A stretch of 64,000 nt of DNA from positions 1-64,000 of IMG/VR virus record IMGVR_UViG_3300025009_000050. The stretch is one strand, 5' to 3'. Of this stretch, positions 2,741-60,121 are shown piece after piece (position 1 is the stretch's first letter; every line of letters starts with the position of its first letter). Both the position numbers and the translations under genes were made by a program. The notes under the pieces were generated by a model. It was given only the letters and a program-made list of their open reading frames with translations. It searched no databases and was not told the DNA's origin.

Positions 2741-2746
2741 GATATC

Positions 2747-2760
2747 GCCCCTTCGGGGGC
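2747..2760 (+). terminator. GC hairpin with cUUCGg loop after the SPFH gene (terminator or stabilising hairpin)
   Basis: GCCCC-TTCG-GGGGC; no strong U-tract follows. Confidence 0.45.
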
Positions 2761-2764
2761 ATTA

Positions 2765-2815
2765 CGGGCTAGCTAGTGGACTAGTCAAAGTAGGTTCGAT
2801 TCCTACCACGGCCCG
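2765..2815 (+). ncRNA. Anticodon-less tRNA-like element
   Basis: Closing stem CGGGCT/GGCCCG, D-like hairpin CTAG-TGGA-CTAG, canonical T-arm GTAGG-TTCGATT-CCTAC; no anticodon arm. Confidence 0.55.
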
Positions 2816-2835
2816 CCCTGATTAAATCTAAGGAG

Positions 2836-3087: not shown

Positions 3088-3144
3088 CTTTGCCCAGCTG
3101 TGAGGGCCAATCCAGCACTAATTTACTTATATACATTTAATTCA

Positions 3145-3185
3145 GGAGCGGATGGCAGATGACAAATAAGTCCAATACCGCTCCA
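3145..3185 (+). pseudogene. tRNA remnant (acceptor stem plus start of D-arm only)
   Basis: GGAGCGG/CCGCTCC 7-bp stem followed by A; begins GGAGCGGATGGCAGA like a type-II tRNA; the interior is deleted. Ends 5 nt before the tmRNA. Confidence 0.4.
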
Positions 3186-3190
3186 TTCAT

Positions 3191-3939
3191 GGGCGTACCG
3201 GGTTTCGACGGAGCGTGAGAGTAAAACTTGCCTAGAGGTTGGTTACCATATAACCACAAGGCTTTAAATGCCAAAACTACTCTTCAAGCTGCCTAGTCTC
3301 TAATTAACTTTAGAGCTGGGAGATCAGCCCCAAAACACCGAGCTTATCCCAGCAATCGGATGAGGGTCAAAGAATGGGAGAGTCCTATCGGAAACAGTAG
3401 TTCGGAAGGGCTACAGATAGGCAATAGGTCATAGAAGGCGAAAGCAATCGCTCTTTCCGGTTTAGGACTGACTAGTAAGGTACGTAGGAGAACTATGGGT
3501 CGTTCTCTGAAGACAACCTGGTAGAGTATTAGAAACTGGCCTCGCATACATTAGTGCAACCCTAACCCATTAAGGAGTCGCTAATGATAATATGGTGGTA
3601 GGTGGCCGAAATTCAGTCCATGTAGGGTTAAAATCCCTACTCTATGGCAAATAGTTTCTTGCATCCTAAATGCAAGTGGTGGAGGTTAATAAATATCACT
3701 GGTGGCAAATTGGCAAAGCGACACGTCGGCTCTATATGTAACTAAGTGAGCTTACGGGTGTCCACCCAGAGGTTACACGCTGAAGCGTGGCTGTTATTAC
3801 AGTTTGTAGGTTCGACTCCTACCCAGTGATGAAAGTGAGCAAGCTACTTAGTGCTGCCGTTGACCACGATGGTCTATTCTAGGTAGACGGTTTAGGGTAA
3901 CAGTTCCGGACGGGGGTTCAACTCCCCCTACGTCCACCA
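3191..3939 (+). ncRNA. ssrA: tmRNA (SsrA), 749 nt, interrupted by a ~400-nt insert
   Basis: Acceptor GGGCGTA/TACGTCC with G3-U70 and encoded ACCA; 5' motif GGTTTCGACGG; T-arm GGGGG-TTCAACT-CCCCC; tag ORF 3270-3296 AKTTLQAA* after TTAAAT; helix 2a CGGAGC/GTTCCG; helix 2c TTGCCTAG/CTAGGTAG; pk4-like GACTGACTA at 3466-3474. Confidence 0.92.
3696..3830 (+). ncRNA. Expanded tRNA-like element inside the tmRNA insert
   Basis: Acceptor TCACTGG/CCAGTGA; Leu/Ser-type D-arm TGGCAAATTGGCAAAGC; stem GACAC/GTGTC enclosing 33 nt; 43-nt variable region with two hairpins; T-arm GTAGG-TTCGACT-CCTAC; no CCA. Confidence 0.7.
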
Positions 3940-3968
3940 TAAAACAAATATAAAGGAAGAAGTATAAT

Positions 3969-5558: not shown

Positions 5559-6782
5559 ATGATTATCAAAGGTAAGCATAATACTGCAGAAGTGTTTACA
5601 GACAATGTTGACGCGCAAACTATATCTCAAATAATTGAATTATGTAATCAGGAATTTACGATTGGTAGTTCAATTAAGATTATGCCGGATTGTCATAAAG
5701 GTGCTGGATGTACCATAGGAACTACAATGACAATAAAGAATAAGATCGTTCCTAACTTAGTTGGTGTGGACATATCCTGCGGCATGCTTGTTGTTGAGTT
5801 AGGTAATATAGATATTGATCTAAAGAATTTCGATGATTATATCACTAATAACATTCCAAGCGGTTATAACATCAATGTCTTATCAAAGTGTGATTTCAAA
5901 GATCAAATTAATAAATTACTTTGTATTAGAGGTATCAGTAAGATCGCCAAAGATTTTAATAAAGCTCTGGGTAGCCTTGGTGGTGGGAATCACTTCATCG
6001 AGATTAATGTGGATAGCCAAGATAATAAATATTTAGTCATACATAGTGGAAGTAGGAACCTTGGTAAGCAAGTAGCAGAATACTACCAGGGCAGTGCTTA
6101 CGGATACCATAGTGGATTCAACGATGATTATGAAGCTATGAAGATTGCTCTAATCAAAGGATACAAAGCAGTTGGTAAGGAACATAAAATACAAAAAGCT
6201 CTGAAGGTTCTTCAGCAAGAGTGCAAGAAAGCCTGTAGTATACCTAAGGATCTGTGTTATCTAGAAGGCACCTTAATGCAAGAATATCTTCATGATGTGG
6301 CCATTATACAGCAATATGCTAGTTTAAATAGAATGACCATGGCTAGAAGAATAGTGGAGGAATGCTTAGGATTAAGATACCGTGAGCTGGATTCCTTTCA
6401 AACAATACATAATTACATTGACCTGGAGCATATGATACTTCGCAAAGGTGCTGTATCTGCTCAGTTAGGAGAAAAATTAATCATTCCCATTAACATGCGT
6501 GATGGCAGCATCATTGCTATAGGTAAGGGAAACCCTGATTGGAATTTCTCAGCTCCTCATGGTGCAGGACGTCTAATGAGTAGGTCCCAAGCTAAAAAGA
6601 ACATTGATATGAATGATTATGTCCTAACCATGAAAGGCATCTATACTTCATCAGTTACTGAATCTACCATAGATGAAGCTCCTATGGCTTATAAGCCCAT
6701 AGAGGAGATCATCGAGAACACAGGTGATACTATAGAAATAGTTAACATCATTAAGCCCATATATAACTTTAAATCAAGCTAG
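5559..6782 (+). CDS. rtcB: RtcB-family RNA ligase
   Basis: MPDCHKGAGCTIG, VGVDISCGM, LGGGNHFIE, IHSGSRNLG, HNY, RKGA, SAPHGAGR, DEAPMAYK. Confidence 0.95.
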   Translation: MIIKGKHNTAEVFTDNVDAQTISQIIELCNQEFTIGSSIKIMPDCHKGAGCTIGTTMTIKNKIVPNLVGVDISCGMLVVELGNIDIDLKNFDDYITNNIPSGYNINVLSKCDFKDQINKLLCIRGISKIAKDFNKALGSLGGGNHFIEINVDSQDNKYLVIHSGSRNLGKQVAEYYQGSAYGYHSGFNDDYEAMKIALIKGYKAVGKEHKIQKALKVLQQECKKACSIPKDLCYLEGTLMQEYLHDVAIIQQYASLNRMTMARRIVEECLGLRYRELDSFQTIHNYIDLEHMILRKGAVSAQLGEKLIIPINMRDGSIIAIGKGNPDWNFSAPHGAGRLMSRSQAKKNIDMNDYVLTMKGIYTSSVTESTIDEAPMAYKPIEEIIENTGDTIEIVNIIKPIYNFKSS

Positions 6783-20339: not shown

Positions 20340-20765
20340 ATGAATAACGTAGTCTTTGTCCGTCTACCACACGGATCACTAACTGAACTTTACTTAAAAC
20401 TTGATCTTGCCAAAGAACTAGGTGGCTCTGTAAAATTTATGTTCTACAGAGCCACATGTCGCATGGCAATCATAGTAGATAACAATGAATGCAATGAATT
20501 TGTAAGTGTGATTACTGGATTGGAGGATGATGAAGATTCATTAAGATTCATAGAATTTATAAGAAAACACACACTATCAATCAGCAAAGATCAAATCATA
20601 GGCTTACTTCATCCGAATGAATGGTGTGCACGCAAAGGGGAAAGCGTAGAGAGAGATCTCATAATACTGAATGAGATTTCCACTGAGTTTAGTATACCAA
20701 TAATTCCACTCAGTGATACTAGACGTGAACTCTTGGAGGTGTACCATAATGGTATCCATACGTGA
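20340..20765 (+). CDS. Hypothetical protein
   Basis: 141-aa ORF. Confidence 0.5.
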   Translation: MNNVVFVRLPHGSLTELYLKLDLAKELGGSVKFMFYRATCRMAIIVDNNECNEFVSVITGLEDDEDSLRFIEFIRKHTLSISKDQIIGLLHPNEWCARKGESVERDLIILNEISTEFSIPIIPLSDTRRELLEVYHNGIHT

Positions 20766-21495
20766 TGTAAGCTTTACTATCCCAAATGAACTTAGAATTG
20801 TTATAAATCTTCTTAATCTGTACTCATTGCCAAACGGAGATCCATACTCAATAGTCGGTGGTTACATCAGAGACTTAATTCTTGATGGTAACCCTCGTGA
20901 TATTGATATTTGTTATTATGAACGATCACTTCTAGATAGTTATATAATAAGAAATAATCAAATCCGTTATGAGCAGGTTAGGAATAAAACGATACAATAC
21001 CTTTTATTCCACGGGATTGAAATACCTATTGATTGGGTACCATGTAATACATTACTGCCATACCCACCTAGATTTGACTTTACAATTAATGAGGTGGCTT
21101 TATTCCCTGATGGAAGATTAATAGCCTGCCCTCAAACATGGCTTGATCTTGAAACAAGAATTCTAAGATTAAGGGAGGAAAAAAATCCAACAACCAACAT
21201 AGTGTTAAGGGCTTGTAGATTCATAGTAACCTGTAACTTGAAACCTTGTAATAGTACAGTAAAAGCAATTAAAGAAGCTATGGTTAATAAAAAATTAAAC
21301 CAGATTACTCTTACTAATCAGTTACAAAATGCTGAAAATACTGGTATACTATATGAAGTATTTGAGTTAATGAGATTCTTCAATATCCCTATAAATGGTT
21401 TTAAGAGTGGCATCTCACTCCTTGAATACCTACTAGACAAGGAAAGAAATAGCCATCTTGATATAGGAGATGAAGAGTACAATGAAATATACTAG
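20749..21495 (+). CDS. Class II nucleotidyltransferase (CCA-adding/poly(A) polymerase family), divergent
   Basis: IVGGYIRDLILDGNPRDIDI (motif A), FDFTIN, LRACRF. Confidence 0.8.
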   Translation: MVSIRDVSFTIPNELRIVINLLNLYSLPNGDPYSIVGGYIRDLILDGNPRDIDICYYERSLLDSYIIRNNQIRYEQVRNKTIQYLLFHGIEIPIDWVPCNTLLPYPPRFDFTINEVALFPDGRLIACPQTWLDLETRILRLREEKNPTTNIVLRACRFIVTCNLKPCNSTVKAIKEAMVNKKLNQITLTNQLQNAENTGILYEVFELMRFFNIPINGFKSGISLLEYLLDKERNSHLDIGDEEYNEIY

Positions 21496-59939: not shown

Positions 59940-60042
59940 TGATGTTGCTGGTAGCATAGTAACGGTTCGAATCCGTTAACCGAGAGATAAAATCTAAAGG
60001 TGGCTGGTGCCAAATCTTAGAGGTTCGATTCCTTAGACGTCA
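59940..60042 (+). ncRNA. Tandem anticodon-less tRNA-elbow modules
   Basis: TGATGTT/GACGTCA closing stem; two GG-containing mini-hairpins, each followed by a T-arm (AACGG-TTCGAAT-CCGTT and GAGG-TTCGATT-CCTT). Confidence 0.5.
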
Positions 60043-60121
60043 TAATAAATTGGTGAAGTTGGGTTAGTGTAGGCTATAGACTACCTATCCTTCCTTCACC
60101 TCCGAAAATTAAATAGGGGAG

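What the first reader, a model, noticed from the sequence alone, without database searches (positions are those of the whole stretch)
3191..3939. Phage tmRNA of double length, split by a ~400-nt insert that contains tRNA-like modules
Seen in the sequence: all tmRNA landmarks are intact (G3-U70 acceptor, CCA, tag AKTTLQAA, pk2-pk4-like elements ending GACTGACTA at 3474, helix-2 3' strand from 3879), yet the gene is 749 nt. CTAG flanks both sides of the extra segment (3472-3475 and 3879-3882). Removing 3476-3882 gives 342 nt and restores helix 2c (TTGCCTAG/CTAGGTAG). A 9-nt direct repeat, CGGTTTAGG, also occurs at 3458-3466 and 3888-3896. The insert lacks recognisable group I or group II cores but holds a full tRNA-like fold (3696-3830) and a degenerate one (~3596-3647). 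Established knowledge: one-piece tmRNAs are about 350-380 nt, and the described departures are circular permutation into two pieces and group I introns. Inference: this may be a new interrupted-tmRNA type. It could be cut by tRNA-processing enzymes into a non-permuted multi-piece tmRNA, excised and re-ligated (RtcB is encoded 1.6 kb downstream, but it needs cyclic-phosphate/5'-OH ends, not RNase P/Z ends), or functional as one giant RNA.
Basis: partly seen in the sequence, partly recalled or inferred. Interest (0 to 1): 0.9.

Follow-up and report, generated by a model that had tools for sequence, protein, structure and literature searches.

The report
Phage tmRNA gene with 407-nt insert
An uncultured 244-kb groundwater phage carries an otherwise intact tmRNA (ribosome-rescue RNA) gene with a unique 407-base non-coding insert holding a tRNA-shaped domain, at a site and of a kind not described for tmRNA genes; whether the RNA is cut in two, left whole or dead cannot be settled from sequence.

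Summary
Window 3191-3939 has every tmRNA landmark: a 7-bp acceptor stem with G3-U70, ACCA, a canonical T arm, the 5' GGGUUUCGAC element and the tag AKTTLQAA*. The two halves lie 749 nt apart, so ARAGORN and Rfam miss the gene. Deleting 3476-3882 in silico gives a 342-nt tmRNA. The same sequence was assembled in at least four samples.

The insert sits between the conserved GACUnA and GUAGA elements, at the joint between the last pseudoknot and the 3' strand of helix 2. It is not a recognisable group I or II intron: there is no Rfam hit, while a real T-loop tmRNA intron scores 35.5 bits in the same search mode. Its folding z-score is -0.55, against -5.7 for that intron. The -1U/omegaG rule cannot be met. 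It is single-copy, non-coding and has no homologue anywhere searched.

Only one part looks structured: a 138-nt tRNA-like domain (3694-3831), a 9-bp stem stacked on a canonical T arm.

Best guess (about 0.38): tRNA-processing enzymes cut at the tRNA-like domain, giving a two-piece tmRNA from a non-permuted gene. Rivals are a giant one-piece RNA, splicing, or a freshly inactivated gene. No relatives exist, so covariation cannot be tested.

The parts
3145..3184 (+). 7-bp hairpin (GGAGCGG/CCGCTCC) in the 5' leader, 6 nt before the tmRNA 5' end
   Evidence: Read directly from the sequence. Its function was not tested.
3191..3216 (+). tmRNA 5' tRNA-like domain: acceptor 5' strand GGGCGTA, then CC-GGGTTTCGACGG
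   Evidence: ARAGORN on the excised sequence places the 5' tRNA domain at 1-26. The 21-nt motif is shared with ordinary bacterial tmRNAs from metagenomes.
3228..3235 (+). Helix 2c/d 5' strand, TTGCCTAG
   Evidence: It is complementary to 3879-3886 (8 bp, of which 2 are G-U), read directly from the sequence. Its position matches CAUGC in the Rfam tmRNA consensus.
3270..3296 (+). Tag reading frame GCC...GCC TAG, encoding AKTTLQAA*
   Evidence: ARAGORN.
3297..3475 (+). Helix 5 and the pseudoknot-rich region (PK2-PK4-like), ending GACTGACTAG
   Evidence: Pairings were worked out by hand, e.g. PK2 as CTGGGA 3316-3321 / TCCCAG 3347-3352 crossing CCGA 3338-3341 / TCGG 3356-3359. The joined exons fold with z = -3.6. 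The pseudoknots were not tested by covariation.
3476..3882 (+). The 407-nt insert (equivalently 3472-3878, because CTAG is duplicated)
   Evidence: It has no ORF of more than 33 aa on the + strand and no Rfam family. Folding z = -0.55. It is single-copy.
3618..3647 (+). Hairpin with a T-arm-like top (GTAGGG-TTAAAAT-CCCTAC)
   Evidence: Pair probabilities 0.65-0.95. It is not a tRNA-like fold. It overlaps a weak wcaG RNA match.
3694..3831 (+). tRNA-like domain: a 9-bp closing stem (3694-3702 / 3823-3831) directly abutting a canonical T arm (3806-3822, loop TTCGACT). Three further hairpins stand in place of the anticodon and variable arms.
   Evidence: Pair probabilities 0.77-0.97. Folding z = -2.1. 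It forms in the full-length MFE and centroid structures. ARAGORN calls it only at relaxed settings.
3879..3911 (+). Helix 2 3' strand (CTAGG-TAG-ACGGTTTAGGG...GTTCCGGAC)
   Evidence: It aligns to the conserved GCAUG-UAG-a... part of the Rfam consensus and to bacterial GTAGACGG. Duplex with the 5' strand: -28.9 kcal/mol.
3912..3939 (+). tmRNA T arm (3912-3928), acceptor 3' strand (3929-3935), then ACCA
   Evidence: RF00023 match 3882-3939, E 7e-10. ARAGORN.

Best explanation
This is a genuine phage ssrA (tmRNA) gene with a lineage-specific 407-nt non-coding insert. The insert lies in the joint between the last pseudoknot and the 3' strand of helix 2.

Shown:
- Both exons are intact.
- Both strands of helix 2 are contiguous in the genome, so the primary transcript can adopt the normal tmRNA fold with the insert looped out.
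- The insert is not a recognisable self-splicing intron.
- Its only structured part is a tRNA-like domain with an acceptor-like stem stacked on a canonical T arm.

Inferred:
- Host tRNA-processing enzymes cut at that domain: RNase P at about 3695/3696, and RNase Z or RNase E plus exonucleases at about 3830/3831.
- The flanking unstructured tail of the 5' piece is trimmed back.
- The result is a two-piece tmRNA. The coding piece starts at 3191 and the acceptor piece ends at 3939. Helix 2 and the acceptor stem hold them together.
- This is the same topology as the two-piece tmRNAs made from circularly permuted genes, reached here from a gene in standard order.
For: - tmRNA identity.
- Helix 2: the 3' strand 3879-3886 is contiguous and complementary to 3228-3235.
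- Insertion point: it maps between the conserved GACUnA and GUAGA elements.
- Same place as the natural break: two-piece tmRNAs consist of a coding piece ending after the pseudoknots and a separate acceptor piece, and RNase P and tRNase Z are thought to process them (PMC3985003; PMC11915505). PK2-PK4 are dispensable in vitro. One permuted tmRNA with a tRNA gene in its intervening sequence is on record.
- tRNA-like domain: a 9-bp stem abuts the T arm GUAGG-UUCGACU-CCUAC, with pair probabilities 0.77-0.97 and z = -2.1. It folds in the full-length context.
- T-arm motif: GGTTCRANTCC occurs 5 times in the window against 0.16 expected. All are in non-coding islands: one is the tmRNA's own T arm, one is in the insert, three are in intergenic islands. 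This suggests the phage uses such modules elsewhere.
- Rest of the insert: it looks unstructured (z about -0.6), as expected for a spacer that is discarded.
- Against an intron: no RF00028 or group II hit at E<=10, while a real tmRNA intron scores 35.5 bits with z = -5.7.
- RNA-end enzymes: the phage encodes RtcB and a tRNA nucleotidyltransferase-like protein.
Against: - There is no RNA evidence of any kind.
- No homologue exists, so neither conservation nor covariation of the tRNA-like domain can be shown.
- ARAGORN at default settings and the Rfam tRNA model do not recognise the domain. Its D arm is rudimentary and there is no CCA.
- Cutting there would leave about 220 nt on the coding piece and about 50 nt on the acceptor piece.
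- Thermodynamic folding of the full transcript pairs the helix-2 5' strand with insert 3641-3650 rather than with 3879-3886. Nested folding also fails to reproduce canonical tmRNA for the excised form.
Confidence: 0.38

Rival explanations
1. Giant one-piece tmRNA. The insert stays in the mature RNA as an expansion domain hanging off the outer end of helix 2 beside the pseudoknot ring, and the 749-nt RNA works as such.
For: - Both strands of helix 2 and all of the tRNA-like domain of the tmRNA are intact without any processing.
- The acceptor stem forms at p = 0.93 in the full-length ensemble.
- The pseudoknot region is the most variable part of tmRNA and is dispensable in vitro (PMC3985003).
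Against: - An exposed acceptor/T-arm minihelix is the classic substrate of RNase P and RNase Z and would probably be cut.
- 269 nt of the insert look unstructured and would be open to nucleases.
- The predicted competing pairing of the insert with the helix-2 5' strand could misfold the RNA.
- The longest tmRNA genes on record (1152 and 1116 bp) are of the permuted and intron forms (PMC11915505).
Confidence: 0.22
2. Recently inactivated gene. A fragment carrying one of the phage's tRNA-like modules was inserted at CTAG by illegitimate recombination or an unknown transposition. The tmRNA no longer works and has not yet decayed.
For: - Only this one genome carries it, with no homologue to show retention.
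- Most of the insert has no detectable structure.
- A 4-nt duplication flanks it.
- The T arm is 17/18 identical to that of the intergenic module at 2790-2806, which suggests local duplication.
- The insert is predicted to interfere with helix 2.
Against: - Every functional element of both exons is intact, and the joined exons fold with z = -3.6.
- The site is the one place where natural tmRNAs are discontinuous.
- The genome is tightly packed, and this is its largest non-coding block in 64 kb.
Confidence: 0.25
3. True splicing. The insert is removed and the exons are joined, either by a new or very divergent self-splicing ribozyme, or by an endonuclease followed by the phage RtcB ligase.
For: - Its size (407 nt) is typical of ORF-less group I introns in tmRNA genes (average 293-414 bp, PMC11915505), and those authors say sites outside the T loop may have been missed.
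- RtcB lies 1.6 kb downstream.
- Insert 3844-3852 is complementary over 9 bp to the ligated junction.
Against: - There is no RF00028 or group II hit at E<=10, while the control intron scores 35.5 bits.
- Folding z = -0.55 against -5.7 for the control.
- No register of the CTAG repeat gives both -1 U and a terminal G (sequence).
- The 9-bp complementarity arises in 5.6% of shuffles and lies at the wrong end for an internal guide sequence.
- There is no bulge-helix-bulge motif and no self-cleaving ribozyme hit.
- RtcB sits in many phages next to tRNA arrays with no tmRNA nearby.
Confidence: 0.12
4. Assembly or chimera artefact.
For: None found.
Against: The block is identical in at least four independent assemblies, including two contigs of about 244 kb.
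Confidence: 0.01

Closest known systems
Intron-form tmRNA genes (group I intron in the T-psi-C loop; Williams 2002; PMC11915505)
   Same: A tmRNA gene interrupted by a non-coding block of about 300-400 nt, so standard detectors miss it.
   Different: - The site is the PK4/helix-2 joint, not the T loop, which is intact at 3917-3923.
- There is no group I core (no Rfam hit, against 35.5 bits for a control).
- The boundary rule is not met.
- The insert is not compactly folded.
Two-piece tmRNA from circularly permuted genes (alpha-, beta-proteobacteria, cyanobacteria; Keiler 2000; Sharkady & Williams 2004)
   Same: - The discontinuity would lie in the same place, after the pseudoknots and before the helix-2 3' strand.
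- The proposed cutting is by tRNA-processing enzymes.
- One known case has a tRNA gene in its intervening sequence.
   Different: - The gene order here is standard, not permuted.
- The break would arise from excision of an internal segment, not from the transcript ends.
- The RF04321 score is only 22 bits, against a threshold of 47.
Intervening sequences of bacterial rRNA genes (fragmented 23S/16S rRNA)
   Same: Extra sequence in a stable RNA gene that is cut out without re-ligation, leaving a functional RNA held together by base pairing.
   Different: Those are closed by a long RNase III duplex. Here no strong closing stem is predicted, and the likely handle is a tRNA-like domain.
tRNA-like processing signals (mitochondrial tRNA punctuation; MALAT1 mascRNA)
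   Same: An internal acceptor/T-arm mimic that would direct RNase P and RNase Z to cut a longer transcript.
   Different: These systems are eukaryotic or organellar. The mascRNA model match here is negligible (13.6 bits, at the other hairpin).
Bacterial Y RNAs (YrlA) with a tRNA-like module, encoded beside rtcB
   Same: A tRNA-like domain lacking a normal anticodon arm, in a genome region that also encodes RtcB.
   Different: No Ro-binding stem, no Rsr gene nearby and no Rfam hit were seen. This was recalled from memory and is a lead only.

Membership tests
tmRNA (RF00023, standard one-piece form) | 7-bp acceptor stem with G3-U70, discriminator A and a CCA end | tested here: met
   3191-3197 / 3929-3935, then ACCA 3936-3939. 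ARAGORN. RF00023 3' match, E 7e-10.
tmRNA (RF00023, standard one-piece form) | T arm with a consensus T loop, and the 5' GGnUUCGAC element | tested here: met
   T arm 3912-3928. The 5' motif is shared with bacterial tmRNAs.
tmRNA (RF00023, standard one-piece form) | Tag reading frame starting at an Ala resume codon and ending ...AA-stop | tested here: met
   3270-3296, AKTTLQAA*.
tmRNA (RF00023, standard one-piece form) | Contiguous gene of about 230-450 nt, detected at the curated threshold | tested here: not met
   The gene is 749 nt. There is no ARAGORN call and no Rfam gathering-level hit on the native sequence.
tmRNA (RF00023, standard one-piece form) | Pseudoknots PK1-PK4 | tested here: inconclusive
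   Plausible pairings were found by hand in 3228-3475. No homologues are available for covariation.
Intron-form tmRNA (group I intron) | Intron located in the T-psi-C loop | tested here: not met
   The T loop TTCAACT at 3917-3923 is uninterrupted.
Intron-form tmRNA (group I intron) | Group I catalytic core (P3-P9) recognisable by a covariance model | tested here: not met
   No RF00028 match at E<=10 in 1.2-kb and 0.45-kb searches. The control tmRNA intron L142:4107-4394 scores 35.5 bits, E 3e-7. The subtype-specific models (GISSD, tmRNA_intron) were not available.
Intron-form tmRNA (group I intron) | -1 U in the 5' exon and a terminal G in the intron, at boundaries that rebuild the mature RNA | tested here: not met
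   The five equivalent registers give A/T, C/C, T/T, A/A and G/G.
Group II intron | 5' GUGYG, 3' AY, and domains V/VI | tested here: not met
   The ends read TAAGG...TCTAG. No group II family matches at E<=10. 407 nt is too short.
Permuted two-piece tmRNA (RF04321) | Acceptor piece encoded upstream of the coding piece | tested here: not met
   The order is standard: 5' domain at 3191, tag at 3270, 3' domain at 3912. RF04321 scores 22 bits against a threshold of 47.
Permuted two-piece tmRNA (RF04321) | Mature RNA in two base-paired pieces | not testable with these tools
   This needs RNA end-mapping.
tRNA gene | Cloverleaf recognised by ARAGORN or RF00005 | tested here: not met
   No call for 3694-3831 at default settings and no RF00005 match at E<=10. 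Only the acceptor-like stem and T arm are canonical.
IS element / MITE | Terminal inverted repeats and several copies | tested here: not met
   There are no terminal inverted repeats. No second copy is found in the window, nor in all of IMG/VR including the full 244-kb contig. The only supporting feature is the 4-nt CTAG duplication.

The most novel reading that the evidence does not exclude
This is a fourth tmRNA gene form: a gene in standard order whose transcript is split at an internal tRNA-like punctuation domain. The result is a functional two-piece tmRNA that converges on the architecture so far known only from circularly permuted genes.
Probability: 0.33. Interest if true: 0.8.

Novelty: new variant of a known kind. 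Interest (0 to 1): 0.6.

Why it matters
Only three tmRNA gene forms are recognised among about 97,000 curated sequences: standard, T-loop group I intron, and permuted. The curators themselves suspect that interruptions at other sites have been missed.

This gene shows that such cases exist and that ARAGORN and Rfam miss them, so tmRNA may be under-called in phage and metagenome annotation.

If the RNA is cut at the tRNA-like domain, it would show a second evolutionary route to two-piece tmRNA. It would also show tRNA-like punctuation operating inside a bacterial-type stable RNA.

The phage also holds other uncalled tRNA-like modules, an RtcB ligase and a CCA-adding-like enzyme. Together these hint at a wider phage toolkit built around tRNA mimics.

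If the gene is dead, the finding is a curiosity.

Tried and rejected
Searches for relatives, all negative apart from the same phage:
- GenBank phages by blastn: whole gene, insert only, and 5' exon only.
- IMG/VR by flanking proteins: RtcB, Band_7 and the downstream 97-aa ORF.
- IMG/VR by four exact DNA patterns from the gene and the insert.
- IMG/VR by an architecture pattern, a T arm 80-110 nt before a tmRNA 3' end. This returned only tRNA arrays and permuted tmRNAs.
- The 5.8-billion-protein collection. The nearest Band_7 relatives are 59% identical, and their contigs show no synteny and no tmRNA. The 97-aa ORF has no homologue.
- GTDB genomes by the 3' domain and by the back-translated tag. 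These gave nothing, or coding-sequence chance hits.
- JGI metagenomes by the 5' domain. This returned the same phage plus ordinary bacterial tmRNAs with GGGGGCG acceptors.

Ideas considered and rejected:
- Group I intron: no model hit, end rule not met, poor folding z-score.
- Group II intron: wrong ends and too short.
- Bulge-helix-bulge intron: no convincing motif when drawn by hand.
- Hammerhead or other self-cleaving ribozymes: no Rfam hit, and a CUGAAGA...GAAA pair cannot form stem II.
- IS5-type MITE: no terminal inverted repeats.
- IS200/IS605-like element: subterminal hairpins and CTAG ends fit loosely, but it is single-copy and the idea is not testable here.
- Genomic-island att remnant based on the 9-nt repeat: the repeat is at chance level, and deleting between its copies would remove the conserved GACUnA...GUAGA element.
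- Decayed tmRNA duplicate: insert-versus-exon alignment scores no better than shuffles.
- Internal promoter or terminator giving two separate transcripts: none convincing.

Method note: a MAFFT alignment with ten bacterial tmRNAs scattered the gap and could not fix the boundary on its own. The conserved GACUnA and GUAGA motifs could.
Full report
**Source.** The window is the first 64 kb of IMG/VR contig UViG_3300025009_000050 (244,052 bp). The same phage was assembled as a 244,136-bp contig in JGI sample 3300001242, and in Logan assemblies of SRR1658472 and SRR1658469. A related contig record names project PRJNA268031, a groundwater metagenome, for the neighbouring run SRR1658471. The window's own runs are assigned to that project by inference from their adjacent accession numbers. 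The 881-nt non-coding block 3088-3968 is 100% identical in all of these assemblies, so the structure is not an assembly artefact. The genome is 37% G+C. It encodes DnaE, NrdD, RecA, ThyX, UvrD, DnaG and NAD-salvage genes. Only two ordinary tRNAs lie in the window.

**The observation.**
- The acceptor stem pairs 3191-3197 with 3929-3935, including G3-U70, and is followed by ACCA.
- The T arm is 3912-3928.
- The 5' element GGGCGTA-CC-GGGTTTCGACGG is nearly identical to the 5' ends of ordinary bacterial tmRNAs recovered from metagenomes.
- The tag frame 3270-3296 reads AKTTLQAA-stop.
- On the native sequence ARAGORN finds nothing. Rfam at curated thresholds finds nothing. In permissive mode only the 3' end 3882-3939 matches the tmRNA model (29.6 bits, E 7e-10).
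- After in-silico removal of 3476-3882, ARAGORN calls a 342-nt tmRNA with that tag.
- The joined exons fold much better than shuffled sequence (z = -3.6).

**Where the insert sits.** The Rfam tmRNA consensus near the 3' strand of helix 2 reads GACUAA-GCAUG-UAG-a..., with GCAUG pairing to CAUGC of the 5' strand. The bacterial tmRNAs aligned here read GAC-UACACUC-GUAGACGG. The phage reads GACUGA-CUAG[insert...CUAG]G-UAG-ACGG. So the extra sequence lies at the joint between the last pseudoknot and the helix-2 3' strand, between two conserved elements. Because CTAG is duplicated, the 3' strand CTAGGTAG (3879-3886) is contiguous in the genome and pairs with TTGCCTAG (3228-3235) without any excision. 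Restoration of the helix is therefore no argument for precise splicing. The insert can equally be written as 3472-3878, sitting in the single-stranded linker. The 9-nt repeat is at chance level: 67% of shuffles have at least one such repeat.

**What the insert is not.**
- *Not a group I or group II intron by Rfam.* Neither intron type matches at E<=10, in a 1.2-kb or a 0.45-kb search.
- *Positive control.* Three metagenome contigs found by chance (L130, L141, L142) carry tmRNA genes with a 286-nt intron in the T loop. In the same search mode the L142 intron scores 35.5 bits (E 3e-7) and its exons 147 bits. That intron folds with z = -5.7, while the phage insert gives z = -0.55.
- *End rule.* No register allowed by the CTAG repeat gives a 5' exon ending in U together with an intron ending in G.
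- *No coding capacity.* The insert has no ORF above 33 aa on the gene strand.
- *Not a typical mobile element.* It has no terminal inverted repeats. There is no other copy in the window or anywhere in IMG/VR, including the rest of the 244-kb contig.
- *No detectable relatives.* It has no similarity to the tmRNA exons beyond chance and no match in GenBank phages except chance T-arm hits.
- *Junction complementarity.* A 9-bp complementarity of 3844-3852 to the joined junction arises in 5.6% of shuffles.

**What the insert is.**
- *Helices.* Base-pair probabilities single out a few local hairpins and one large domain, 3694-3831.
- *The tRNA-like domain.* A 9-bp stem (3694-3702 / 3823-3831) runs directly into a canonical T arm, GUAGG-UUCGACU-CCUAC (3806-3822). 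This is the coaxial acceptor/T-arm arrangement of a tRNA. Before it lies a rudimentary D region containing UUGG. Three hairpins stand where the anticodon and variable arms would be. The domain has z = -2.1 and forms in the full-length MFE and centroid structures. ARAGORN reports it only at relaxed settings, as a tRNA with a 55-nt 'intron'.
- *The rest of the insert.* The other 269 nt are indistinguishable from shuffled sequence (z = -0.66). The second 'degenerate tRNA-like' element is just a hairpin with a T-loop-like loop (3618-3647).
- *G+C content.* The insert is 45% G+C, above the 99th percentile for this genome, but much of that comes from the tRNA-like domain.
- *Similar modules elsewhere.* The T-arm motif GGTTCRANTCC occurs five times in the window against 0.16 expected. 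One is the tmRNA's own T arm and one is in the insert. One is in a tRNA-like minihelix just upstream at 2765-2815, whose T arm is 17/18 identical to the insert's. Two are in a single 116-nt element at 59943-60050. None of these is called by ARAGORN or Rfam. The phage therefore has a small family of tRNA mimics in intergenic positions, and the insert carries one of them.

**Relatives.** None could be found, so conservation and covariation cannot be tested. The searches were:
- flanking proteins against IMG/VR;
- flanking proteins against 5.8 billion proteins;
- contigs of the nearest Band_7 relatives, which are 48-59% identical and show no synteny and no tmRNA;
- exact and degenerate DNA patterns against IMG/VR, GTDB genomes and JGI metagenomes.
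The tag and the acceptor sequence were not found in any bacterial genome searched, so no host tmRNA is available for comparison either.

**Mechanism.** The literature held here recognises three gene forms (PMC11915505). Introns are reported only at four subsites of the T loop, and the authors say other sites may have been missed. Two-piece tmRNAs consist of a coding piece that ends after the pseudoknots and an acceptor piece that supplies the helix-2 3' strand, T arm and CCA end. They are thought to be made by RNase P and tRNase Z. PK2-PK4 are dispensable in vitro (PMC3985003). The phage insert sits exactly at that natural discontinuity and offers those enzymes a textbook handle.

I therefore rank the hypotheses as follows.
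1. The tRNA-like domain is cut out and the unstructured tail trimmed, leaving a two-piece tmRNA from a non-permuted gene (0.38).
2. A freshly inactivated gene (0.25).
3. A giant one-piece RNA (0.22).
4. True splicing by an unknown ribozyme, or by an endonuclease plus RtcB (0.12).

RtcB (5559-6782) and a tRNA nucleotidyltransferase-like protein (20713-21492) fit a general RNA-end repair kit. In other phages RtcB sits beside tRNA arrays with no tmRNA, so its proximity carries little weight. One caution applies to all the functional models. Nested thermodynamic folding of the 749-nt RNA pairs the helix-2 5' strand with insert 3641-3650 rather than with its native partner. Such folding also fails to reproduce canonical tmRNA for the excised form.

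**Verdict.** The feature is real and reproducibly assembled, and the site and kind of interruption are new for a tmRNA gene. It is a single genome with no RNA data and no relatives, so function is unproven. It is a new variant of a known kind. Interest is moderate to high (0.6). It would be high if the two-piece outcome is confirmed.

Noticed in passing
window 2741-2822: An intergenic tRNA-like minihelix lies right after the Band_7 gene. It consists of a GC hairpin at 2747-2760, then a 6-bp stem (CGGGCU/GGCCCG) enclosing a small hairpin and a canonical T arm, GTAGGTTCGATTCCTAC. That T arm is 17/18 identical to the one in the tmRNA insert. ARAGORN and Rfam do not call it.
   Followed up: partly
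window 59943-60050: A 116-nt intergenic element has a 7-bp acceptor-like stem (UGAUGUU/GACGUCA) enclosing two D-arm-like plus T-arm-like units, with T loops at 59964 and 60022. Folding z = -2.6. It shares a 57-nt similarity with insert 3763-3820. No detector calls it at default settings.
   Followed up: partly
window 3614-3690: A weak match to the phage-associated wcaG RNA motif (RF01761) scores 22 bits against a gathering score of 42. The conserved GUUUCUUGC...GCAAGUGG flanks of the motif's second hairpin are present.
   Followed up: no
window 20713-21492: A 260-aa protein resembles tRNA nucleotidyltransferase, the CCA-adding enzyme (PHROG 2244, E 1.6e-9; Pfam PolyA_pol head domain below threshold). 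With RtcB at 5559-6782 it suggests a phage kit for repairing or maturing RNA ends.
   Followed up: partly
window 3228-3236 with 3641-3650: The 5' strand of helix 2 (UUGCCUAGA) is complementary over 9 Watson-Crick pairs, with one bulge, to insert sequence UCUAUGGCAA. In the full-length ensemble this pairing (p about 0.5) displaces the native helix. It may be chance or a competing fold.
   Followed up: partly
L142:3776-4419 (also L130, L141): These metagenome contigs carry tmRNA genes with a 286-nt group I intron in the T loop. A close relative without the intron (L123, L134) has the tag ADDAQLALAA. This is the known intron form and was used here as a positive control.
   Followed up: yes
L099:9853-9972, L102:4105-4224, L110:6996-7115; also L100, L101, L108, L109: In several IMG/VR phage contigs a GGACG-plus-T-arm element lies about 100 nt after a tRNA-Leu and is not called by ARAGORN. 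It may be a tmRNA-like domain without a tag.
   Followed up: no
L092:9682-9717 and L094:1763-1798: The abiF RNA (RF03085) matches above its curated threshold (43.8 bits) next to two tRNAs, in phage-like contigs that carry a distant Band_7 homologue.
   Followed up: no
window 3191-3211: Relative to bacterial tmRNAs that begin GGGGGCG-UACC-GGGUUUCGAC, the phage gene begins GGGCGUA-CC-GGGUUUCGAC. The acceptor register is shifted by 2 nt and the linker to the D-loop analogue is 2 nt shorter.
   Followed up: no
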